Virus record (IMG/VR): IMGVR_UViG_3300028800_000001
Location: 1-64,000 of that record
Strand: one strand, 5' to 3'
Length of the DNA: 64,000 nucleotides
The notes below the pieces were generated by a model, which searched no databases, had not been told where the DNA came from, and saw only the letters and a list, made by a program, of their open reading frames with translations. Below, one piece after another: positions 1-40,638 of this stretch. Position numbers and translations under genes: made by a program. How positions within the stretch are numbered: the stretch's first letter is position 1; every line of letters begins with the position of its first letter.

Positions 1-457
1 CGTGCACAAGGCGATGATCTTTTTGCTCCCAACTGTAGTTGCTATGAAACTTTCCATTGGCATGAAAGTACACGTCGTACGTGTAGTTGAGATCATAATT
101 AGGTACAACAAAATCAGGATCAAGCGCACGTAATTGCGTTTCAAAGTAGCCGAGCGCGGCCAGAATAGTGTTGCTGGCACGAGCGTGAGAGTAATTCCAA
201 CGCTCCTTGTCTTTGGGGTGCAGCATTTTGTAGTAGTTCTGCATGAGCTTCCCAAATTGCGTCTCCAGGTAGTTTGAAAACGCATAGGAAAGGTACTCTT
301 CTATGGTTTCTCCGCCAGATTTACCACCTTTGAGCATTAATATTTCTGGATAGTCAGCCATGAATGTTCCCAGGCCGTATTCCTGAATATAGGTCTGTTC
401 TTTTTTGTAGATGATCTTTTGTGAGTCGCGAAAGGTGAGCAGGTATTTGAGCACCAT
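1..457 (-). CDS. hypothetical protein, runs off window (3'-truncated)
   Basis: Manual translation: open frame MVLKYLLTFRDSQK... from ATG 457 to the window edge; start uncertain (see finding). Confidence 0.7.
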   Translation of the reverse strand, partial: MVLKYLLTFRDSQKIIYKKEQTYIQEYGLGTFMADYPEILMLKGGKSGGETIEEYLSYAFSNYLETQFGKLMQNYYKMLHPKDKERWNYSHARASNTILAALGYFETQLRALDPDFVVPNYDLNYTYDVYFHANGKFHSNYSWEQKDHRLVH

Positions 458-7490: not shown

Positions 7491-7936
7491 AGTTTTGGTT
7501 CCTCCAACTGTATTGTGCGCCGAATGACATCCCAATTGTGCACTTCGCTGTGCTCTAGGAGCCAATCAAGCTGCTTAGAACTCAAAGATGTCCCTTGCAT
7601 GGTTGACTCCACTTTGTTGTCGCCGCTGACACCGGCATAATACTCGTTTTCACGATACGGAAAGCCCTCTTGAAAGAGCTCACCCAACTTGTGTGGGTTT
7701 CCGTTGGCTTCAACGAGCAACAAATAATAGATCTCAAATTCCGCTTTCGGGTTGAAATCTAGGATCACTTCTTTGACCGCATCTTGCAGCTCGTGCATTG
7801 GCTTATTCTTTGCCAGCCGCATACAAGCAAGTAAGATCTTGCCAGGAGAAGTATGGTAGCGTGACGCAAGCGCACGTATTTCGTAAAGTTGTTCCATATC
7901 ACGAAGTGTGAAGCTTATTTCTGGCCGCTGTTCCAC
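7487..7936 (-). CDS. hypothetical protein
   Basis: 149 aa, RBS. Confidence 0.7.
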   Translation of the reverse strand: MEQRPEISFTLRDMEQLYEIRALASRYHTSPGKILLACMRLAKNKPMHELQDAVKEVILDFNPKAEFEIYYLLLVEANGNPHKLGELFQEGFPYRENEYYAGVSGDNKVESTMQGTSLSSKQLDWLLEHSEVHNWDVIRRTIQLEEPKL

Positions 7937-7950
7937 AATGTCACCTCTTC

Positions 7951-8361
7951 TCAGTCATAGAGTCCCATCTCTTGTGAGATGGCAGCGATTTCAGCAAGAC
8001 CTGTTTCACGTTCCTGCGCACGCCGTTGCTGAAACACCAGAACATCTTCTAATAAGACGCGCCTGTGTGTGCCAACACGAATAAAGGGGATAACACCATT
8101 TTCTAACAGTTTCACTAAGTGCGGCCTGGACATACTTAAAAGATCTGCCACTTGTTGTGTGGTCATTTCCTTTTGTCCAGCGATAAGGGCAACGTAATGC
8201 CCACGCGCTAATTGATGTGCGGCTTCCGCAAGTAAAATGCGCAGTGAAATTGGCAGAGAAACGGTTTGTTCTCCTATTTGCATCTGCGCACTTTCTTGTT
8301 GAAGCAATTTGCGTATGCTCTTGAGCACTTCTTGATCTTGTGGGTCGCCTTGAACAATCAT
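7951..8361 (-). CDS. excisionase-like HTH_17 DNA-binding protein
   Basis: MTTQQVADLLSMSRPHLVKLLENGVIPFIRVGTHRRV. Confidence 0.85.
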   Translation of the reverse strand: MIVQGDPQDQEVLKSIRKLLQQESAQMQIGEQTVSLPISLRILLAEAAHQLARGHYVALIAGQKEMTTQQVADLLSMSRPHLVKLLENGVIPFIRVGTHRRVLLEDVLVFQQRRAQERETGLAEIAAISQEMGLYD

Positions 8362-8426
8362 ATAAGTACACCTTTCTTTTTCTACGAGAAGTATACTATA
8401 TAATCGAAACAAAAGCAATAAGCGAA

Positions 8427-9431
8427 CTATTCGCCACGTGCATGCCAGAGCGCCGGAATGGTTTCCTCTTCGCGCTGGTAATAATCATCGCTGTGTGTTG
8501 AAAAGACATTGAAGGTTTTGACAACTGAAAGGGCTCCCAACTCATCTGAAAGCAGGGAAAGCCAGAGGCCAAGATACCAGTCAGCTTCGGGAACCGCCTG
8601 ATTGCGCACAATGCAAAAGTCTTTTGTGTAGTTGCCGTTCTCGAAGACGCGTAAGCGACGCTCTCTGTTTTTACGCGGATAGTCACGACGCAAACGGTAC
8701 ACGCGTCCTTCAAAACTGTAGCTTGGTACATCTAAGAAGTGATTACGTTCTAGTTGGGCGTAGAGCTCTTCTCCCAGGAACATTTGCAGCGTCGCTTCAG
8801 CGCGCTGTTCTGGTCGCAGACCATCGCCAAGATCGGTCTTTTCCGTCATTCTGATAAATGAGGTGAGCCGTTTCTTCGCTTCTTTTGCGCTCTTTGGCAG
8901 CGTAAAGTGTTCTGGCTGTTGACCGGCCATTGGGAAGCCACCATAGCGTGCGATATCGGCTGCATGAGCGTACCCGCACCATCCAGCAATACGGTCGTAG
9001 ACGCGCTCTATATCGGGGCGTCGATTGGCAAAGCCAATAATACAGCGTGAGGTATCGCCAGTGCCAAGCGTGAGGATCGTCTCCACGAAGAGATAGGTAC
9101 TGCTCTTGAGTGACGCATTGCGACTGGTAATAGCCCAGTCTCCAGCGAGACCACCATGCCAGCGCTCATCCATTTTTTCAGTCACGCCGTGAGGGTCAAT
9201 GACTCTATCGGTGCCTAGACGGAGAAAGTCCTGATGTGTATGCGCACTCGCGTAAAATCGGGTATGAGGACAATTTCGCTCTTCATCGCCACGTTTGAAA
9301 ATCCAGGCCGGACAATCACAAGAAAGATCGCCTGTCGTATTTTCCAACAGGCGATACCAGGAGTCAGGTGAACTGGACGATTCAAAGATGGCGACTAAGC
9401 GATATGCCCCTGATTGCAAACTTGCAGGCAT
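8427..9431 (-). CDS. SWIM Zn-finger-containing protein
   Basis: N-terminal SCDCPAW...CPH (CxC..CxH). Confidence 0.75.
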   Translation of the reverse strand: MPASLQSGAYRLVAIFESSSSPDSWYRLLENTTGDLSCDCPAWIFKRGDEERNCPHTRFYASAHTHQDFLRLGTDRVIDPHGVTEKMDERWHGGLAGDWAITSRNASLKSSTYLFVETILTLGTGDTSRCIIGFANRRPDIERVYDRIAGWCGYAHAADIARYGGFPMAGQQPEHFTLPKSAKEAKKRLTSFIRMTEKTDLGDGLRPEQRAEATLQMFLGEELYAQLERNHFLDVPSYSFEGRVYRLRRDYPRKNRERRLRVFENGNYTKDFCIVRNQAVPEADWYLGLWLSLLSDELGALSVVKTFNVFSTHSDDYYQREEETIPALWHARGE

Positions 9432-9443
9432 AACGCGTCTCCT

Positions 9444-9782
9444 TTAGCGACTTCCGCCAACGGTACGTGGAACAATAATTGTATGCGGTGCGGTGGTATC
9501 AAACTCACCTTTGTTGAGACGTTTGAGACCAACGGTCCCACCTTTTTCGGTGATTTCTTTGGCAGTGAAGACGGTGTTGCCGATGCTTTGGGCTTCGCTG
9601 ACCAAGCGCATTGCTTCACGCACCGCAGCCTGTCCTTCATCGTCAAGATAGTGCAGGGATTCGATGTCGTTAATCAGCGGATAGCTCAAACGCGTATCGC
9701 CAGACTTTCCAGTCACACGAAGTTCGGCAGTACCCAGGAGAATTCCCTCTGGAATAACTTTGTTTACTTTCTTACGTGGCAT
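9444..9782 (-). CDS. small protein with ubiquitin/ThiS-like C-terminal IIVPRTVGG(SR)
   Basis: C-terminal di-glycine motif preceded by hydrophobic strand; Ubl fold is inferred. Confidence 0.55.
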   Translation of the reverse strand: MPRKKVNKVIPEGILLGTAELRVTGKSGDTRLSYPLINDIESLHYLDDEGQAAVREAMRLVSEAQSIGNTVFTAKEITEKGGTVGLKRLNKGEFDTTAPHTIIVPRTVGGSR

Positions 9783-9860
9783 TTCTTTGTGTCCTTTCGG
9801 GAAGAATAAGAAGTACTCTTTTCCTTCTTATTCTTTTTGTCTTCTGAAAAAGCAGTAGTT

Positions 9861-10232
9861 TTACTGGGTGTTTCGGAACATCAAGCTAACATTTTGACCA
9901 GGGAAGAGGGTGCAGCTCAGGATGCGTGTCATCCCAAAACTGGTTGTATGAGAAACAAAACCTCCATGCACGCCATGACGCACCTTGATGTCGCGTGCCT
10001 CTTTGGCGATTTGCATCGTACCAGCAAAATCAGCATAACTCTCTTTGCTGCTGTAGGCATCTGCGATGAGCGAGGAGATATTGTAGGGCTCACCATCAAC
10101 CTCAACAAACACCTGATACTCGGTGTCAAAGATGCCAAACTCGACGCGTTTTGCTCCCATCCGGTGATACGTCAAAACGGTCTTGGAAGTGATCATACAT
10201 TGAAGTTGTTCAAAAGCAGTAGTCGTAATCAT
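9861..10232 (-). CDS. hypothetical protein
   Basis: 123 aa, RBS. Confidence 0.7.
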   Translation of the reverse strand: MITTTAFEQLQCMITSKTVLTYHRMGAKRVEFGIFDTEYQVFVEVDGEPYNISSLIADAYSSKESYADFAGTMQIAKEARDIKVRHGVHGGFVSHTTSFGMTRILSCTLFPGQNVSLMFRNTQ

Positions 10233-14172: not shown

Positions 14173-14563
14173 ACTCGGTTTCCTTTGCTGGCCGCGCTAC
14201 AATATGTGTGAGATGCAGCGTTGGGTGCTGTTTTTGAAATGCTCTTTTTGCAGCTTCTCTATTGGGAGCGCTGATAATTTCTGGCACAACCGCTTTGCCG
14301 CCTCGTTTGGCTTTGGCTTGCGCCAGACTCATACAGGCCCAACGCCGCTGACCATCAACGCCAATGTTGTCGAGCGCGTACAGACGGATTGCTCGGATCT
14401 GGCTGATCGTGAGATATTCGTCGTCGTAATACTTATCGCCAAGCGCCTTAAAACGCATGACGCGCCACTCGTCTTCAAAATCTTCGTAAAATTTGAGCCC
14501 CGCGTCGCTGTATGCGTCGTTGAGCTCTTTTTTAACTTGTTTGAGCAGATCCGCTTTTTTCAT
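14165..14563 (-). CDS. hypothetical protein
   Basis: 132 aa, coupled. Confidence 0.7.
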   Translation of the reverse strand: MKKADLLKQVKKELNDAYSDAGLKFYEDFEDEWRVMRFKALGDKYYDDEYLTISQIRAIRLYALDNIGVDGQRRWACMSLAQAKAKRGGKAVVPEIISAPNREAAKRAFQKQHPTLHLTHIVARPAKETECV

Positions 14564-14862
14564 TATTTTACGCCTGCAATCTTTTTGGCCTGCGCAAGAA
14601 GCAACTGAAGGTCGAGCATTGAAGCGGTCTTGCCTTCGATTTTTTCGCCCACCTTGAAGTCAATCCAGAGATTTGGGGTGGAACGTCCATATGGATCGTA
14701 ATCCATACCGATGTAGGTGATAGGACAGAAAACAACCGCGCCGTCAATCGTGCGTGCCAGCGTTAACTCTTTGCCGTCGCGCAGCATCAACGTAATTCCT
14801 AAATAGAATTTAATCATCGGATGATTTTTGGTAACTCTGCCGTCTCTCGTATAACCCTTCAT
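14563..14862 (-). CDS. hypothetical protein
   Basis: RBS AAGGAG before MKGYTR, first gene after promoter. Confidence 0.7.
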   Translation of the reverse strand: MKGYTRDGRVTKNHPMIKFYLGITLMLRDGKELTLARTIDGAVVFCPITYIGMDYDPYGRSTPNLWIDFKVGEKIEGKTASMLDLQLLLAQAKKIAGVK

Positions 14863-14903
14863 TGCTTTTCTCCTTGAATTATTTTTTCTCTTCAACACTC
14901 CTA

Positions 14904-14959
14904 AGTATACGGCAGCTCTTACCAAAAGACAAGCGTTTCTTCTATGAATATTCAGAAAT
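14904..14959 (-). promoter_or_regulatory. class I promoter + palindromic box
   Basis: TTGTCT-17-TATACT; box centre 14954, 22 nt from -35. Confidence 0.8.
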
Positions 14960-15061
14960 AAAAAAGACAACGCGAAGACGGGAAGGAGGGAATGTGGAAT
15001 TAATTATTTTTTCGTGATGCGGGGGAAATTATTTTTTAAAATTAATTAATTATTTGGAGGC

Positions 15062-15090
15062 AAAAGAAAAACGGGTACATCCCGTTTTCC
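15062..15090 (-). terminator. intrinsic terminator
   Basis: Plus-strand AAAACGGG/CCCGTTTT stem with T-rich tail on the minus strand. Confidence 0.65.
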
Positions 15091-15100
15091 TGTGCTGTGA

Positions 15101-15490
15101 TTAGACAAACACTTGTGTGGTCGCATCCTTTGCGGTGATCGCAAGTGGATGATCCAATTGTGCTGCGGTTTCTTTTGTGGTAAGAGTGACAGGGCGTTTG
15201 AGGCGATCTAGCACGCGCTGTGCGCGACTGGTTCCGTTTACCCGATTGTAGTTGTCAGTCCGTACCCATTCGCCTTCGGAGAAGTCCAGGTACAACTTTC
15301 TGCCACACCATTCTCCAACGTACCCCTTGCCGGTTTGCAGCAAGTCTTTGGCCTGCTCAATCGACATTCGGTCGCACTCTTTGCAAAAGCGCTCATGGGG
15401 CGTCTTGCAATGATGCTCTGCGGCTTCAAACAAAGCGCTGAGAACCACCGCTTGCTTCATGAGGTCTTGTTCCACACGAATACTACTCAT
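15101..15490 (-). CDS. hypothetical phage protein
   Basis: RBS TAAGGAG; G.VGEW.GR.LYLD...D.YNR.NG. Confidence 0.7.
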   Translation of the reverse strand: MSSIRVEQDLMKQAVVLSALFEAAEHHCKTPHERFCKECDRMSIEQAKDLLQTGKGYVGEWCGRKLYLDFSEGEWVRTDNYNRVNGTSRAQRVLDRLKRPVTLTTKETAAQLDHPLAITAKDATTQVFV

Positions 15491-15849
15491 AGAAAAAAGC
15501 TCCTTAGATACCATAGAGGGTGCTCCCAGACTCATTCCAGGCGCACCCTTACAACGTTTGCCAAATTATTTATTACTTCTGCGTTAATCATACCTTGTAT
15601 ATGGAAAAAAATCAACCAACCAACTAGTCAAACGGCATCGTTTCTTCAATTTTCTTCCAAAGCTTGAAGCGCTCTTGTTTTTCTTCCTGGTGTGCGCGGT
15701 CTCGATCTCGTTGTTCATGTACCTCAATCCAGATGGTTCCAAGAAAAAATAGAAAGCAAAGAATAATAAATGCGTACAGGTGGAATTCCCTCCTCTCGTT
15801 TCAAGTTCCCAGTACTTGAAACGAAGAAAGGTGGAAAAAAGTACCGTGC

Positions 15850-18766: not shown

Positions 18767-18856
18767 AAAAAAAGAGAAGAGGTGTGATGCCCCTTCTCTC
18801 CTGAAAAGAACCGATGCGCTCCGACTTACAAGAAGTCGAAAGAAACTGCATGAACG
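18767..18856 (-). ncRNA. putative ~90-nt small RNA divergent from the array
   Basis: Extended -10 TGCTATACT (18871-18863), hairpin 18822-18838, U-tailed terminator 18767-18799, no ORF. Confidence 0.5.
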
Positions 18857-18862
18857 AAAGCT

Positions 18863-18918
18863 AGTATAGCAGAAAATTCGGAAGAAGTCTCTCATTTTTC
18901 AGAAAAATATGCTATACT
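18863..18918. promoter_or_regulatory. back-to-back extended -10 promoters with perfect palindrome ATTTTTCAGAAAAAT
   Basis: TGCTATACT on both strands (18863-18871 minus; 18910-18918 plus); palindrome 18894-18908. Confidence 0.7.
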
Positions 18919-18955
18919 GCGTGCAACGAAATATCTGCGTCTTCCCAAGAGAAGC

Positions 18956-19981
18956 GTTTGAATCAGTTTATACGTAAGGCAATACAGCGGTATGAACCAA
19001 TTGTGAGGTTAGTCTAAAGAAATATGGGTGAGTAAATCTATTTGTAAGAGCATAAGATGAGAGCGAGACACCAAATTACTTGTTTCACATGACATGTTCG
19101 AGTCATTAATAGTGTTGCTTCGGTATGAGCGTACGAACCAATAAACTTGTATATCTACATCAGCGTGTGAGTCATGATGTTCGCGTTTCCTACACTCAGT
19201 ACGACTCCAATAATGTGTCCGTTCCTTATCATAGTAGGAATCTCGGTGCGTGTTTGCTCAATAGATTAGTATGAACACTTAGTACATGTTGTTTCAATTG
19301 ACAGGTGCGATCCGGTTCAGCAGCGCATCAATACTTTTGCGAGAGTCATTCTTTCTGTGAAGTGTCTTGAGAAAGGTATGAGCCCAATAGGTAGTCAAGA
19401 GCAATCTAGAAGTACGAATTCTTGAAAACGTGTTTCCATGATATATGTGTGAACCATTGTGTAGGCAATTCATCTGATTTGTCTGAGTCGCTAACAACGT
19501 TTCTCTCATTACATTTGCACGATCCAACAAAGCAGTAAGAATACCATAGAAGTGAGAATCAATATGTAGGTCTTTTCGTTCAATTCGTATGAACCATCAG
19601 GGCAGTAGTTTTTATACAAGGTGTGAGTCGCAATAATAGTTGCTTCAGGTTTGAGGATCGAGTCACCAACGCAGTATTATCAGCAACACTGAACGATTGT
19701 AAAATGATAGTTTTACCATATCGTGAGTAAGAGCCAACCTAGCCGTTGCGTCGCATAAAGGGAGCGAACGAATAGAGCAGTCAATTCGATATTGAAGTTT
19801 GAGTCTACCAGGAGTTTGTATCATGGCTGGGGCGTGAGCGTTTGAATTACTGATACTGTATAATCAAACAACAAGTATGAGGCGTGATTTTATAAAAGAC
19901 GTTCGAGCTGTTCAAAGGAGATCTTTCGAAGCTTGGGAGCGAATCGTTTTAAATGTCATTTCAATAAGCGCGTATGAAATA
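18956..19981 (+). repeat. dual-repeat ~35-nt-period interspaced array (TIGR-like), probably transcribed as ncRNA
   Basis: About 30 units; repeat A GTNYGARYCA every 34-37 nt, repeat B GT-N4/5-YCA at offset ~18; no credible ORF; promoter upstream, terminator downstream. Confidence 0.8.
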
Positions 19982-20011
19982 AGAGAGAAGCAGGGGGTTT
20001 GCTTCTCTCTT
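19981..20011. terminator. bidirectional terminator
   Basis: AAGAGAGAAGC/GCTTCTCTCTT 11-bp stem between array and convergent peptidase gene. Confidence 0.8.
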
Positions 20012-20889
20012 TATGCAGGGGTAACAATATCGCCTTGTCCACCCCAATACTTTTCAAAGGTGGCGTAAGTCATCCACTGCATGTTGAGTCGAGAGCTGTC
20101 GGCCAGATGTACGTACTGGATGCCGCTGATTGTTTTTCCACCGATTACCACTAAGATATGTCCTCCGGTCCACTTGTAGGGCGGAAAACCAATGATGACA
20201 GGTGTCCCATTATTACCAGCGTTGACCACATCGTCAATTGTGGGATTGTTCATTTCCTGTGTCTTAAAACCAAAGTGCGAAGTGGTGTAGTCAATCCCTT
20301 GCCACTCCATGAGTCCCTGGTCGGTCGTGATTTCGTGAATACTACTTTCGTAGTTGATCACATCCGTGAGACTGAGCTTTTTTCCGTAGGCATCCATGAC
20401 CTCTTTCATGGAAGAAGCAGAACAGTCAGACGGCCACCAGTTATTATACTGATCAGTGGAGCTATAGTTGGCTGCGTTCGTCTGATCAATACGTACAAGT
20501 GCCTGGGAAGCATTGGCTGCTTTCGCAGGAGCCGCAACTGGCATCTTGACTTGTTTGGTGGTCACCACTGGCGTTGCTTTGGGCGAATTTTGTGTGACTA
20601 CCACCACGTTTTGCATCACGCCGCCATCCCAGCCAGTGATCACGCCAACCGGCCCAACTGGTCGTTGTGTCCAGGCAATAAATCCAAGAAATGTAATGCC
20701 AAAGACGATGACAAGTGCGCCATTTACCAGAAACTTCTTCAGGCGTGATGGACGGCGCAAGACGGGAAGTGGATCGGTCCTACGAACCGCAGTGCTGCGT
20801 GCAGGAACAACAGAGATAGCGCGAGACGGTGGTTCCTCAAGAATTGATTCGACCACCATCACACGCCGCGAGAGACTCGATTCTCTCAT
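20011..20889 (-). CDS. membrane-anchored C39-like (papain-fold) cysteine peptidase
   Basis: TM helix, low-complexity linker, then DCSASS...GGHILVV...LADSS (C-H-D). Confidence 0.8.
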   Translation of the reverse strand: MRESSLSRRVMVVESILEEPPSRAISVVPARSTAVRRTDPLPVLRRPSRLKKFLVNGALVIVFGITFLGFIAWTQRPVGPVGVITGWDGGVMQNVVVVTQNSPKATPVVTTKQVKMPVAAPAKAANASQALVRIDQTNAANYSSTDQYNNWWPSDCSASSMKEVMDAYGKKLSLTDVINYESSIHEITTDQGLMEWQGIDYTTSHFGFKTQEMNNPTIDDVVNAGNNGTPVIIGFPPYKWTGGHILVVIGGKTISGIQYVHLADSSRLNMQWMTYATFEKYWGGQGDIVTPA

Positions 20890-25180: not shown

Positions 25181-25236
25181 AGTATAGGCTTTTTTCACAA
25201 GCGCGTCAAGACTTTTTTCTAGTTATTTTCAGAAAG
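25181..25236 (-). promoter_or_regulatory. class I promoter + box
   Basis: TTGACG-17-TATACT; centre 25231 (22 nt). Confidence 0.85.
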
Positions 25237-26061
25237 GAAACGTTTGAGGCGATGAAATACGCCAGGGGAAACAGTCATGTTGTAGTCGGCAGGAAGGTCG
25301 TGCTGGTAGGCACGTTCCTGATATAGCAGGCGCGCAAGAGCATTGTAAACGAAAGCCGCTTCCTCGAAGGTCTCGTAGCTTCCACCGCTAAAAGTGCCAC
25401 CATCAATATGCAGTGCGACGCCGTATTTGGCACCCAGGCGACGAATGCCAGGAGGGAGAATGCGCAGATTGGCGCGGTGGTTATTGAGCTTGTTGCCATC
25501 AATATGACGCACACGCTGATTAAGCCAGAGTGCTTTGCCGCTCATGTGTTCTGCCACTTCGTGATGTAAATAGACATTCCCGTTATCGTTGCCAAGAGCA
25601 CGTGCACCACCATGACGTACACCGCTATACTCTTCGCTGCGAAAAACGAAGCCACGCTTATCCAGATTCCAGTGGTGCAGCGCAAAGATATCGAAGTCTT
25701 GTGCGTCAAGAAGCACTTTCTTGCCGTTATCTAAATAAATACCACTACGATCTGTTTGAAATTCAATCGCGTTTAGTTTAATGACGCCTTTGCGTTTGAG
25801 CGTATGTTGTGGTTTTGAGAGGAGCAAGTTGTCGCGTTCGCAGTTAAGCTGATCGTCATCCAGGTGCAGCACATGATAGTGCTTTCTGCGCAGCAGGCCG
25901 CTACGTTTGGCAATCTCTCTACGCAGCAAGACGTTACGACCTTGAATAGAGGCGACCACATCACCCCTGGTATTTCTCCGCCAGGGGTATGTTTCTATCA
26001 ACGCTGCGTCTTCTTCGCTCACACGCAGCACGCTTTCGTCAGGCAGCAAGAACTCGACCAT
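25219..26061 (-). CDS. HNH homing endonuclease (two HNH repeats, AP2-like C-terminus)
   Basis: HLDDDQLNCERDNL; HIDGNKLNNHRANL; G.YETFEEAAFVYN..A; ends SENN in the box. Confidence 0.85.
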   Translation of the reverse strand: MVEFLLPDESVLRVSEEDAALIETYPWRRNTRGDVVASIQGRNVLLRREIAKRSGLLRRKHYHVLHLDDDQLNCERDNLLLSKPQHTLKRKGVIKLNAIEFQTDRSGIYLDNGKKVLLDAQDFDIFALHHWNLDKRGFVFRSEEYSGVRHGGARALGNDNGNVYLHHEVAEHMSGKALWLNQRVRHIDGNKLNNHRANLRILPPGIRRLGAKYGVALHIDGGTFSGGSYETFEEAAFVYNALARLLYQERAYQHDLPADYNMTVSPGVFHRLKRFLSENN

Positions 26062-39094: not shown

Positions 39095-39532
39095 CTACAA
39101 AGTTTTCTTTCGATTAAGTTTGACACCTTCGTTTGCAATGGGTCTTTTATTGTATCTTTCTGGCAAGTGTGACCCATTTTTATTCACTATCGCGTTTAAG
39201 CAAGGCCCAAGACGATAGATAAGCTCTTCCTCGCATGTTTGGATAAAAACATCGTGCATTGCTATTTGCTCATACTCTTTTGCCGTAATTAATTCTTTAA
39301 GTTCCCATATCTCCATCGTCCAATTAAGAGATTCTGGCATATTGTCAAGAATAATTTGACCAACCCTGTCGGGCCAGGGAAGGCGAGCGCCTTTTCCCAG
39401 GTGTTCAAGTAGTCTGGTATAAGGATGAATAGAGCGCCCAACATAGAAGATAGTATCTTCATCTCTGTAGACATAGAGGCATTGCTCCTCCTCGAATGTT
39501 TCCATTGCTTTGCCAATAGTAGTTTGTATCAT
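39095..39532 (-). CDS. GIY-YIG nuclease family protein
   Basis: CLYVY...FYVGRS...RLLEH...E...P.LN. Confidence 0.8.
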   Translation of the reverse strand: MIQTTIGKAMETFEEEQCLYVYRDEDTIFYVGRSIHPYTRLLEHLGKGARLPWPDRVGQIILDNMPESLNWTMEIWELKELITAKEYEQIAMHDVFIQTCEEELIYRLGPCLNAIVNKNGSHLPERYNKRPIANEGVKLNRKKTL

Positions 39533-40638
39533 TCGTCATCTTCCTCGCTAATAATAACCCCATCGTTTGCGATAGAGCCGCGCTTTGCATAGTAAAGGGG
39601 CATGTGCGGAGTTTTCCAGCCTCCACCACTTTGCACTTTATCAAGCGGCGTGCCATTTTTGAGTGCGTCATAGACCCAAAAGTGTCTGGCATCGTGAGGT
39701 GAGAGATTTTTTACCCCAATTGTTTCTCCAAGAGTACGAACACGGGCATTGATAGCGCGTCTCGTAATGCGTTTGTTTTCGTAGCCCAGGAAAAGTGGCC
39801 CTGCCGTTCTTGGTATTCCAGCGACGCCTTCCTTGAGCATTCCTATATAATTCTCAGCCGCAATACGCGTATGCTTTTTAAGTTTTTGTTTATCGTGAAG
39901 ATTTGTCTTTTCATGATAGATATGCACATTGCCGGTCTGAAGGGAAAAATCTTCAATATTAAGATTGGCAACTTCGCCACAGCGTAATGCATGCTCAAAA
40001 AGCAATCCCGTAAGTAAGGCATCTCTCGCGGCCATTAATTCCTGCTGTTCCTTACTTTGTTTCTTCGGCTGCGTCGTCGCTCTCTTGATTTTAAAAACTT
40101 TTGACGTTTCTATTTCGACCGCATTTTCTTTTTTATTTCCAATGCGTGTTGGCACACCATCAGCGATTCGCTCATGATCACGATTTACTGCGAGCTTTCC
40201 ACTTTTGCCTCGCACCAATTGAATGAGATGTAATTCTTCGAGAGAAAGGAGTCCGGCCTGTTCAACAAGGTTACAATACTTCTTGATCGTGGTGAGGTAG
40301 ACGCAGATCGATCCCATTGCATACCCTTTGTTTTCCAACCAGACCTGAAAGCCAGAAACCAGGGCATCATTTATACCTTCCCAACTTTCAGGAATTTCGT
40401 AGAGTTCTTCTGATGCTCTGCCAACGCCAACAGCATAGAGGTAATTGCTGAAATGAGTCAGATCATTTTTCTGCCGCCTGCGGGTGTTTTCGGTGAGTCC
40501 TTTATGGTATTCGAGAAAGATATTGCTTGCCCTTGCTTTTCTGGCAGCGTTTCCAGCGCGATACAAATCGTCAGGATACAGTTGATCTGAAACACTGGTA
40601 TCCGTGACAAAGATAGTGATCGCCTTTTCTTCTTCCAT
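39529..40638 (-). CDS. tyrosine recombinase/integrase
   Basis: ALRCGEVA.L, K, SPHDARH, GGW, LYY (R-K-H-R-W-Y catalytic set). Confidence 0.92.
   Translation of the reverse strand: MEEEKAITIFVTDTSVSDQLYPDDLYRAGNAARKARASNIFLEYHKGLTENTRRRQKNDLTHFSNYLYAVGVGRASEELYEIPESWEGINDALVSGFQVWLENKGYAMGSICVYLTTIKKYCNLVEQAGLLSLEELHLIQLVRGKSGKLAVNRDHERIADGVPTRIGNKKENAVEIETSKVFKIKRATTQPKKQSKEQQELMAARDALLTGLLFEHALRCGEVANLNIEDFSLQTGNVHIYHEKTNLHDKQKLKKHTRIAAENYIGMLKEGVAGIPRTAGPLFLGYENKRITRRAINARVRTLGETIGVKNLSPHDARHFWVYDALKNGTPLDKVQSGGGWKTPHMPLYYAKRGSIANDGVIISEEDDE

What the first reader, a model, noticed from the sequence alone, without database searches (positions are those of the whole stretch)
18956..19981. 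Orphan dual-repeat ~35-nt interspaced array (TIGR-like guide-RNA array candidate)
Seen in sequence: an ORF-free kilobase carries a degenerate 10-mer GTNYGARYCA at 18956, 18990, 19026, 19061, 19096, 19131, 19165, 19199, 19234, 19269, 19305, 19339, 19376, 19412, 19447, 19481, 19517, 19552, 19587, 19621, 19656, 19691, 19727, 19762, 19797, 19832/19840, 19875, 19901, 19937 and 19972. Spacing is mostly 34-37 nt, with a register slip near the 3' end. In most units a second repeat starts with GT (or GC) at offset ~18 and tends to end YCA (e.g. GTTGTTTCA, GTTGCTTCA, GTCATTTCA, GTTTGCTCA, GTGTTTCCA). A unit is therefore repeatA-(~8 nt variable)-repeatB-(~8 nt variable). The array lies between an extended -10 promoter (18910-18918) and a terminator (19981-20011). 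Established: TIGR arrays of phages and parasitic bacteria alternate two short repeats with two ~9-nt spacers and are processed to 36-nt guides for Nop-domain Tas proteins. Inference: this is a TIGR-type or new tandem-spacer guide array. No Nop/IS110-like, Cas or ToxN gene is recognisable in the window, so the effector acts in trans or is a new family. A ~35-bp period (3.3 helical turns) argues against phased iterons.
Basis: partly seen in the sequence, partly recalled or inferred. Interest (0 to 1): 0.96.

Follow-up and report, generated by a model that had tools for sequence, protein, structure and literature searches.

The report
Remote TIGR guide-RNA array in jumbo phage
The repeat kilobase is a real TIGR guide-RNA array of a 327-kb phage whose partner protein (a nuclease-free Tas) sits about 25 kb away outside the window, so it is a new, unusually placed member of a recently described RNA-guided DNA-targeting system, not a new kind of system.

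Summary
There are 30 units of about 35 nt at exactly the listed positions. Each unit is a 10-nt edge repeat (G-U-R-Y-G-A-R-Y-C-A), an 8-nt spacer, a ~9-nt loop repeat (G-U-n4-U-C-A) and a second 8-nt spacer. An unbroken 21-unit chain compares with 2-3 in shuffles.

The window is the first 64 kb of IMG/VR contig IMGVR_UViG_3300028800_000001, which is 327,295 bp with a 127-bp terminal repeat. No Tas gene lies in the window. The same contig, at about 320.3-321.2 kb, encodes a 294-aa Nop-domain Tas. It matches PDB TasR 9MTY at E=1e-13 and TasH at E=2e-10, has no nuclease domain, and keeps the Y/H RNA-processing dyad. Arrays of the same repeat type flank it (about 9 and 70 units).

The window array lies about 25 kb downstream of tas on the same strand. 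It has a matching TGCTATAnT promoter and leader, and ends in a truncated edge repeat plus a hairpin.

The strongest evidence is covariation. Positions 6 and 7 of each edge repeat pair with positions 3 and 2 of the next edge repeat (26/27 and 23/27 units; 0 of 5000 shuffles reach this). No such pairing holds within one repeat. This is the two-base-pair clamp of a processed tigRNA.

Targets remain unknown: 52% of the phage genome holds no self-target. Verdict: new member of a known kind.

The parts
18910..18918 (+). Extended -10 promoter-like element TGCTATACT of the array transcript (predicted)
   Evidence: Read. It aligns with TGCTATAGT upstream of the tas operon's first array, at the same distance from the first full edge repeat. 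Not tested experimentally. The consensus scanner does not list it, because the -35 hexamer is poor.
18924..18955 (+). Leader with a degenerate, shortened first unit: an edge-like CAACGAAATA, then loop repeat GTCTTCCCA at 18939-18947, then an 8-nt spacer
   Evidence: Sequence. [quoted passage not shown] The assignment here is inferred.
18956..19981 (+). Dual-repeat TIGR array. 30 edge repeats start at 18956, 18990, 19026, 19061, 19096, 19131, 19165, 19199, 19234, 19269, 19305, 19339, 19376, 19412, 19447, 19481, 19517, 19552, 19587, 19621, 19656, 19691, 19727, 19762, 19797, 19840 (a partial duplicate at 19832), 19875, 19901, 19937 and 19972. The last one is truncated or degenerate. Each unit is a 10-nt edge repeat, 8-nt spacer A, a loop repeat (G-U ... 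U-C-A, about 9 nt) and 8-nt spacer B.
   Evidence: Searches give the positions, profile and significance. Searches give the inter-repeat covariation: 26/27 and 23/27 units paired, 0/5000 shuffles as high. The excess of G.U-type over A.C-type combinations (22 vs 7) points to the + strand as the RNA strand.
19982..20011 (+). Terminator-like hairpin (12-bp stem) directly after the last truncated edge repeat; probably bidirectional
   Evidence: -21.4 kcal/mol on + (z -4.8) and -17.9 on - (z -8.2). The T tract on + is short (TTTAT). The hairpin lies immediately after the stop codon of minus-strand gene 20011-20889.

Best explanation
Window 18956-19981 is a distal ('satellite') dual-repeat TIGR array of a jumbo phage with a roughly 327-kb circular map.

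Inferred steps. It is transcribed on the + strand from its own TGnTATAnT promoter to the hairpin at 19982-20011. The precursor is bound by the phage's own Tas protein, made from a gene about 25 kb away at contig 320,277-321,161, outside the window. The precursor is cut inside each edge repeat, near the invariant G4-A5, by the Tas C-terminal Tyr/His dyad. This releases about 29 tigRNAs of about 35 nt. In each mature unit the 5' end (R6-Y7-C8-A9 of one edge repeat) pairs with the 3' end (G0-U1-R2-Y3 of the next) through two covarying base pairs. This leaves two 8-nt spacers, separated by the loop repeat, to pair with opposite strands of a 16-bp DNA target.

Likely output. This Tas has no HNH or RuvC domain, so it is TasA-type. 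The expected result is RNA-guided DNA binding, that is transcriptional blocking or recruitment, not cleavage. The targets are not known.

What is shown here: the array anatomy, the covariation, the strand, the Tas homology and its Y/H dyad, the sister arrays, and the shared promoter-leader.

What is inferred: transcription, the processing site, binding, and repression.
For: (1) Anatomy: 10+8+~9+8 nt, 30 units, far above chance.

(2) The same register applied to the validated Salicola phage array gives 10+8+10+8 nt, with edge repeat AAGCGAGCCA. Its positions 3-9 equal our consensus Y-G-A-R-Y-C-A.

(3) Covariation between adjacent edge repeats. Position 6 of unit i pairs with position 3 of unit i+1 in 26/27 window units (A-U 11, G-C 10, U-A 3, C-G 1, G-U 1; shuffled mean 15.2; 0/5000 shuffles reach it). 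Position 7 of unit i pairs with position 2 of unit i+1 in 23/27 units (0/5000). The tas-adjacent array gives 66/67 and 59/67. These two position pairs show no such excess within one repeat. The published TasR structure describes exactly such pairs between different edge repeats of a processed tigRNA (PMC12045711).

(4) A DNA pattern scan found a second locus on the same contig. It holds a roughly 9-unit array, a 294-aa ORF and a roughly 70-unit array with the same consensus.

(5) That ORF is a Tas. TasH-family HMM E=2.3e-19, hhalign 97.8%. PDB 9MTY TasR E=1.1e-13 and TasH structures E=1.7e-10. Pfam PF02371 E=1.8e-5. phrog_4285 E=1.7e-45.

(6) Its motif P-Y-A-L-A-Y-L-G-H aligns with SpTasH Y289/H296, the pre-tigRNA processing residues (PMC13421893).

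(7) The contig ends repeat 127 bp, so the map is circular and tas is about 25 kb from the window array on the same strand.

(8) The promoter-leader is shared with the tas operon, and the array ends in a truncated edge repeat plus a hairpin.

(9) The array is kept nearly unchanged in several rhizosphere metagenomes. One sample shows 1 difference in the array over 1.8 kb laid.
Against: No expression or processing data exist: no RNA run could be listed.

The array is not adjacent to tas, whereas published arrays are described next to tas. About 40 mostly minus-strand genes lie between them.

The box motifs are looser than the published 'UG ... CCA' (here U-R ... Y-C-A). Units are 35 nt, not 36.

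Two units near the 3' end are malformed.

No target was found. There is no exact or one-mismatch 16-bp site in 169 kb (52%) of the phage genome.

The + strand T tract after the hairpin is weak.

Only 52% of the contig was examined for further tas genes or arrays.
Confidence: 0.9

Rival explanations
1. The window array is a decaying, non-functional duplicate of the tas-linked array. It would be a relic copied with its promoter and no longer used.
For: It is 25 kb from tas. Two malformed units lie near the 3' end (19832/19840; 26-nt unit at 19875). Edge positions 8 and 9 are only 73% and 57% conserved.
Against: The tas-adjacent array is equally or more degenerate at those positions (52% and 63%). 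The two-base-pair clamp is kept in 26/27 and 23/27 units through many compensatory changes, which needs ongoing selection on the RNA. The promoter element and terminal hairpin are intact. No unit is shared with the tas-linked arrays, so it is not a recent copy.
Confidence: 0.05
2. The repeats act as DNA: phased binding sites (iterons or a centromere) for a DNA-binding protein. One candidate would be a ParB-like partner of TasA.
For: There are thirty regularly spaced short motifs in an ORF-free stretch. The gene after the tas-linked array gives faint ParB-like leads only (structure match TM 0.29/0.44). tasParB genes are reported next to tasA (PMC12045711).
Against: Covariation links positions 32 nt apart in consecutive repeats and includes G.U-type but few A.C-type combinations (22 vs 7). 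This fits RNA pairing on one strand, not recognition of duplex DNA. The motif occurs on one strand only. The array has transcript-like boundaries. The identical architecture sits directly beside tas.
Confidence: 0.02
3. It is a repetitive RNA of another class, for example a ToxI-like type III antitoxin array or a decoy RNA that serves a different protein.
For: The unit length of about 35-36 nt resembles ToxI repeats (my own knowledge, not tested).
Against: Units share only about a third of their bases, whereas antitoxin repeats are near-identical. No ToxN-like gene appears among the Pfam families reported for 130 window ORFs (only 25 of 33 families are listed). Rfam has no match. A cognate Tas with identical arrays exists in the same genome.
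Confidence: 0.02

Closest known systems
SpTIGR-TasH of Salicola phage CGphi29 (NC_020844; array at 15,383-15,760, tasH at 14,395-15,324)
   Same: Phage-encoded dual-repeat array. The register is 10-nt edge, 8-nt spacer, ~10-nt loop, 8-nt spacer. The edge core C-G-A-G-C-C-A fits our Y-G-A-R-Y-C-A. The same positions 6/7 pair with positions 3/2 of the next repeat. The array ends in a truncated edge repeat plus terminator. The Tas Nop domain is homologous and the Y/H processing dyad is conserved.
   Different: SpTasH has an N-terminal HNH nuclease and ours has none. The SpTIGR array directly follows tasH and has about 10 nearly invariant repeats. Ours has 30 units 25 km... no: 25 kb from tas, about 109 units genome-wide, 35-nt units, and edge repeats whose pairing positions vary and covary from unit to unit.
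TasA systems (nuclease-free Tas), including tasA-tasParB operons with 10-nt-repeat arrays upstream of, downstream of and between the genes (PMC12045711). Nuclease-free TasA (a stem-loop type) and catalytically dead TasR were shown to repress transcription (bioRxiv 10.64898/2026.09.09.750476).
   Same: The Tas here is a Nop-domain protein without a nuclease domain. Arrays lie upstream and downstream of it, and the large array separates it from the next co-oriented gene.
   Different: The downstream 306-aa gene is not recognisably ParB by sequence and gives only faint structural leads. A further array with its own promoter lies 25 kb away.
Orphan or remote CRISPR arrays that use Cas proteins encoded elsewhere in the genome
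   Same: A guide array is unlinked from its effector gene, has its own promoter, and presumably supplies guides in trans.
   Different: The chemistry and architecture differ: two short repeats, split 8+8-nt spacers, and a Nop-domain effector. No adaptation genes are known for TIGR.
Box C/D snoRNAs with Nop5/Nop56/58
   Same: Two guide segments are each bracketed by short box motifs bound by a Nop domain. The ends of the RNA pair with each other.
   Different: There are no K-turn-forming C/D boxes or L7Ae partner, the target is DNA not rRNA, and units are arrayed in tandem and cut out of one precursor.

Membership tests
TIGR-Tas, dual-repeat type | Two distinct alternating short repeats (8-12 nt) separated by two short spacers (8-12 nt, usually 9; 8 in SpTIGR) | tested here: met
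   10-nt edge repeat, 8 variable nt, ~9-nt loop repeat (8-11), 8 variable nt. The definition comes from PMC12045711.
TIGR-Tas, dual-repeat type | Regular unit of about 36 nt, many units in tandem | tested here: met
   30 units of 34-37 nt (mode 35). A chain of 21 compares with 2-3 in shuffles. The unit is one nucleotide shorter than the canonical 36.
TIGR-Tas, dual-repeat type | Box D at the start and box C at the end of both repeats (published for TasR arrays: UG ... CCA, four bases between) | tested here: met
   Met in a relaxed form. Edge repeat: G-[U-R]-Y-G-A-R-[Y-C-A], four bases between the boxes. Loop repeat: [G-U]-n4-[U-C-A]. The box pair is R:Y and covaries; it is not a fixed G:C.
TIGR-Tas, dual-repeat type | Base pairs between the 3' half of one edge repeat and the 5' half of the next, supported by covariation | tested here: met
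   Positions 6(i)-3(i+1) pair in 26/27 units and 7(i)-2(i+1) in 23/27 in the window array, with 0/5000 shuffles as high. No such excess at these position pairs within one repeat.
TIGR-Tas, dual-repeat type | [quoted passage not shown] | tested here: met
   The last edge repeat at 19972 runs into a 12-bp hairpin (-21.4 kcal/mol). The leader holds a degenerate short first unit. The T tract is weak.
TIGR-Tas, dual-repeat type | A Tas protein with a Nop domain encoded with the array | tested here: met
   Met for the genome: 294-aa Tas at contig 320,277-321,161. Not met for adjacency: no Tas in the 64-kb window. The distance is about 25 kb across the circular junction.
TIGR-Tas, dual-repeat type | Tyr/His processing dyad in the C-terminal loop of the Nop domain (dual-repeat clades) | tested here: met
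   P-Y-A-L-A-Y-L-G-H aligns with SpTasH Y289 ... H296 (residues from PMC13421893).
TIGR-Tas, dual-repeat type | Transcription and Tas-dependent processing into unit-length tigRNAs | not testable with these tools
   No RNA run was listed for this sequence. The DNA runs are rhizosphere metagenomes.
TIGR-Tas, dual-repeat type | Spacer A and spacer B pair with opposite strands of adjacent target DNA | tested here: inconclusive
   No exact or one-mismatch site in either arrangement in 169 kb of the phage genome. Two-mismatch sites: 25 against 24 in controls with re-paired spacers. The host genome is unknown.
Type III toxin-antitoxin (ToxIN-like) antitoxin RNA array | Near-identical tandem repeats of about 36 nt next to a ToxN-type endoribonuclease gene | tested here: not met
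   Only about 12 of 35 positions are conserved between units, and Tandem Repeats Finder finds no array. The neighbouring genes are on the other strand and give no such Pfam match.
CRISPR array | One repeat of 23-55 nt, nearly identical between copies, alternating with spacers of similar length | tested here: not met
   There are two different repeats of 9-10 nt and 8-nt spacers. No Cas families appear in the Pfam scan.

The most novel reading that the evidence does not exclude
TIGR arrays can be unlinked from tas and run as separate transcription units. On this reading the jumbo phage keeps at least three arrays (about 9, 70 and 30 units; roughly 109 guides) for one nuclease-free Tas. The distal array would be a separately regulated guide set.

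A second point concerns the edge repeats. They are not a fixed sequence. They form a chain of unit-specific covarying two-base-pair clamps, which could keep folding and processing in register.

If so, tas-centred catalogues undercount arrays. This complete genome, found with its host community in the same rhizosphere metagenomes, would also be a good place to find natural TIGR targets.
Probability: 0.3. Interest if true: 0.6.

Novelty: new member of a known kind. Interest (0 to 1): 0.42.

Why it matters
TIGR-Tas systems were described in 2025. Their natural targets, their biological role in phages and the way arrays gain spacers are still open questions (PMC12045711; bioRxiv 10.64898/2026.09.09.750476).

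This locus adds three useful facts.

1. An array can sit about 25 kb from its tas gene with its own promoter. Searches limited to the surroundings of tas will therefore miss guides.
2. A single complete jumbo-phage genome carries roughly 109 guides for a nuclease-free Tas. This favours a regulatory or silencing role and gives a large guide set to match against host genomes from the same samples.
3. The edge repeats show clean unit-by-unit covariation. This gives a purely computational signature of functional tigRNAs, including the transcribed strand, that can be used to validate candidate arrays without RNA data.

Tried and rejected
Searches that found nothing.
- Tandem Repeats Finder reports nothing at the locus.
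- Rfam and tRNA scans are empty.
- blastn and tblastn of the region and neighbours against GenBank phages give no match.
- A Pfam scan of 130 window ORFs shows no Nop or IS110 family among the reported families.
- SpTasH phmmer, the TasH-family HMM, hhalign on 232 window ORFs, a seven-Tas HMM and phmmer with the phage's own Tas find nothing in the window. The effector is therefore not in the window.
- Flanking proteins as queries in IMG/VR returned only the source contig.

Dead ends and inconclusive results.
- My first guess for the Salicola array (the 8.2-9.0 kb gap) was wrong. The array is at 15.38-15.76 kb, found by autocorrelation.
- The self-targeting test on 77 kb and then 169 kb of the genome was negative.
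- The search for further arrays or tas genes in the extra 105 kb found none.
- No RNA sequencing runs were listed (the first attempt failed technically).
- The 306-aa gene after the tas-linked array has no Pfam, PHROG or PDB sequence match. It gives only sub-threshold ParB-like leads in the Atlas, so its identity as tasParB is left open.
- Many multi-hit loci of the pattern scan (for example L048, L049, L059, L087) match on both strands at 18/36-nt periods. They look like coding tandem repeats, not TIGR arrays, and were not pursued.

Full report
**1. What is in the sequence**

Window 18,956-19,981 has no ORF longer than 78 aa. A weight-matrix chain returns the same list.

The position profile shows an edge repeat G0-U1-R2-Y3-G4-A5-R6-Y7-C8-A9. 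G0, G4 and A5 are invariant in 30/30 units. Eight variable bases follow. Then comes a loop repeat that starts G-U (24 and 22 of 30) and ends U-C-A (C in 25/30 when anchored from the next unit). Eight more variable bases follow.

Length variation sits inside the loop repeat, so the unit is 10 + 8 + ~9 + 8 = 35 nt. An unbroken chain of 21 matrix hits compares with at most 2-3 in 20 Markov shuffles, and no other chain exists in the window on either strand.

Two caveats apply. The strict IUPAC 10-mer matches only 7 sites exactly. Tandem Repeats Finder sees nothing, as expected when only a third of each unit is conserved.

**2. Where the window comes from**

Flanking proteins identify the window as bases 1-64,000 of IMG/VR contig IMGVR_UViG_3300028800_000001, which is 327,295 bp. 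The last 127 bases of the contig equal the first 127, so the map is circular or terminally redundant.

The gene content fits a large phage. Genes are small and densely packed, mostly on the minus strand, and include HNH endonucleases, thymidylate kinase, MazG and an integrase. There are no relatives in GenBank phages. The DNA occurs in several rhizosphere metagenomes.

**3. Comparison with a validated TIGR array**

In Salicola phage CGphi29 (NC_020844) the TIGR array lies directly after tasH. Read in the same register, its units are AAGCGAGCCA, 8 nt, AAGACAACCA, 8 nt. Positions 3-9 of that edge repeat (C-G-A-G-C-C-A) fit our consensus Y-G-A-R-Y-C-A at every position.

The published definition of a TIGR array also fits the window array (PMC12045711). 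It requires:
- two alternating 8-12-nt repeats;
- spacers of 8-9 nt;
- units of about 36 nt;
- a truncated edge repeat plus a terminator at the 3' end.

**4. The effector**

Nothing in the window resembles a Tas protein by any of these tests:
- Pfam scan;
- phmmer with SpTasH;
- an HMM of 121 TasH-family sequences;
- hhalign against that family;
- a seven-Tas HMM.

A pattern built from three consecutive edge repeats was then scanned through IMG/VR. It hit the same contig a second time, at 313,693-327,295 (locus L068). That locus contains, all on the + strand:
- a TTGCAA-17-TGCTATAGT promoter-like site;
- a roughly 9-unit array;
- a 294-aa ORF (L068 6585-7469);
- a roughly 70-unit array (7508-9990);
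- a 306-aa ORF whose ribosome-binding site follows the last truncated edge repeat.

The 294-aa protein is a Tas. The evidence is:
- TasH-family HMM E=2.3e-19 and hhalign 97.8% over the Nop region;
- PDB 9MTY (TasR) E=1.1e-13 and TasH structures E=1.7e-10;
- PF02371 E=1.8e-5;
- phrog_4285 E=1.7e-45 over its full length.

Only about 50-95 residues precede the aligned region. They carry no HNH or RuvC signature, so the protein is TasA-type. Its C-terminus P-Y-A-L-A-Y-L-G-H aligns with SpTasH Y289 and H296, the residues that cut pre-tigRNA (PMC13421893).

The tas-linked arrays have the same consensus and spacing as the window array. [quoted passage not shown]

The pattern scan also recovered five other Tas loci with adjacent arrays in unrelated viral contigs: L011, L017, L037, L050 and L096. 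The motif is therefore a general TIGR signature.

**5. Evidence that the array works as RNA, and on which strand**

The variable R and Y positions of the edge repeat are not noise. Position 6 of one edge repeat is complementary to position 3 of the next in 26 of 27 regular window units. The pair types are A-U 11, G-C 10, U-A 3, C-G 1 and G-U 1. The shuffled mean is 15.2, and 0 of 5000 shuffles reach the observed value. Position 7 is complementary to position 2 of the next repeat in 23 of 27 units (0 of 5000).

The tas-adjacent array gives 66/67 and 59/67. The same position pairs taken within one repeat show no excess.

This is what a tigRNA cut in the middle of the edge repeats requires. Its 5' end (R6-Y7-C8-A9) and its 3' end (G0-U1-R2-Y3) come from different repeats and pair with each other. 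The TasR structure paper describes these pairs and notes their covariation.

G.U-type combinations outnumber A.C-type combinations 22 to 7 across the two pairs and three arrays. This points to the + strand as the RNA.

The invariant G4-A5 lies between the two pairing halves and is the likely processing site. That step is inferred.

**6. Transcription signals**

The window array is preceded by TGCTATACT (18,910-18,918). This aligns with TGCTATAGT before the tas operon's first array, at the same distance from the first full edge repeat and with a similar leader.

The array ends in a truncated edge repeat running into a 12-bp hairpin (-21.4 kcal/mol, z -4.8). The hairpin also follows the stop codon of the convergent gene 20,011-20,889 and folds on the minus strand too, so it is probably bidirectional.

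A strong minus-strand terminator at 18,802-18,770 would stop antisense read-through. None of these signals was tested experimentally, and no RNA run could be listed.

**7. Targets**

A dispersed promoter motif (see the items noticed in passing) was used to fetch 15 more pieces of the contig. This brought 169 kb, or 52% of the genome, into reach. It holds no further array and no further tas gene.

For 102 spacer pairs I searched both possible arrangements: A followed by the reverse complement of B, and the reverse. There are no exact and no one-mismatch sites. Controls with re-paired spacers give 0 and 1.75. Two-mismatch sites equal the control, 25 against 24.

The guides therefore do not obviously target the sampled half of the phage's own genome. 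The host is unknown, and 16-nt targets cannot be searched meaningfully in public collections.

Spacer pairs are almost all unique. Only three neighbouring units in the large tas-linked array (L068 8695, 8797 and 8865) are clear paralogues.

**8. Population data**

Contigs from four other rhizosphere samples carry the array. One sample spans it in a single contig, with 1 difference inside the array and 6 over the 1.8 kb laid. The others carry identical pieces.

Minor co-occurring variants also exist. One contig carries 261 bases where the window has 88. Another differs at 19 positions over 147 nt, and its three changes inside edge repeats (at positions 3, 6 and 7) stay within the Y/R consensus. 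These are assembler contigs, so this is only a lead.

**9. Verdict**

This is a dual-repeat TIGR array that uses a Tas protein encoded elsewhere. It is not a new class.

Three things are new relative to the literature I could read:
- the separation of an independently promoted array from tas by about 25 kb;
- the very large guide set (about 109 units) serving one nuclease-free Tas in a complete jumbo-phage genome;
- edge repeats whose pairing positions change and covary unit by unit.

The mechanism beyond anatomy rests on homology with TasH, TasR and TasA work. This covers processing by the Y/H dyad and DNA binding without cleavage. The likely output is transcriptional repression, as shown for nuclease-free Tas proteins of other (stem-loop) arrays.

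Noticed in passing
window 1197, 7285, 14928, 18726, 22198, 22967, 25205, 32476, 32834, 40731, 44185, 54099, 60652 (30-nt motif, + strand); also L068 6134: A dispersed 30-nt motif, GTCAAG-n3-TT-n-TTCT-n-TG-W-AT-W-TTCAGAA, occurs 13 times in the window, always in the same orientation. Its reverse complement places TTGAC as the -35 of minus-strand promoters, for example the TTGACG-17-TATGAT site at 18730-18702. A conserved 25-nt element lies upstream of the -35. It looks like a phage promoter class with an upstream regulator or UP site. A relaxed form of the motif retrieved 26 stretches of this contig from IMG/VR, three of them holding three sites each.
   Followed up: partly
window 1-127 and contig 327,169-327,295 (L068 13477-13603): A 127-bp direct terminal repeat of the contig, 100% identical. 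The 327-kb assembly is therefore circular or terminally redundant and probably complete.
   Followed up: yes
L068 10009-10929 (contig about 323,701-324,621), + strand: A 306-aa gene starts right after the last truncated edge repeat of the tas-linked array and so is probably co-transcribed. It has no Pfam, PHROG or PDB sequence match. The Atlas gives only faint ParB-like and HTH leads (TM 0.29/0.44). It could be a divergent tasParB-type partner.
   Followed up: partly
L068 8695-8900 (tas-linked array): Three units two to three units apart have near-identical spacer pairs (2-6 differences in 16). This points to local block duplication followed by divergence as one way the array grows. Across all 94 units, 9 pairs are similar at 5 or fewer mismatches, against 3.3 in shuffles.
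   Followed up: partly
window 19100-19253 and 19586-19732, in metagenome runs X2 and X5: Minor variant contigs co-occur with the main form. One has 261 bases where the window has 88, which suggests different unit content. Another has 19 substitutions in 147 nt, and its three changes inside edge repeats (positions 3, 6 and 7) stay within the R/Y consensus. This suggests strain-level turnover of units.
   Followed up: no
L011, L017, L037, L050, L096 (other IMG/VR contigs): The three-edge-repeat DNA pattern alone recovered five other Tas genes with adjacent arrays. The L037 Tas is the closest relative of this phage's Tas (phmmer E=1e-69). The Tas proteins of L017, L050 and L096 carry Cys-rich insertions (CxxC ... 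CxxC) inside the Nop domain.
   Followed up: partly
window 39529-40638 (-), 25219-26061 (-): A tyrosine integrase (PF00589, E=1.6e-19) lies next to a short plus-strand cluster of genes; several HTH-domain regulator genes also occur in the window. This is unusual for a genome of this size if the phage is strictly lytic. There are also several HNH homing-endonuclease-like genes.
   Followed up: no
window 18770-18802 (-): A strong minus-strand intrinsic terminator (13-bp stem, long T run) lies between the array promoter and the next minus-strand gene. It would end any antisense transcript that reads through the array from the genes to its right.
   Followed up: partly
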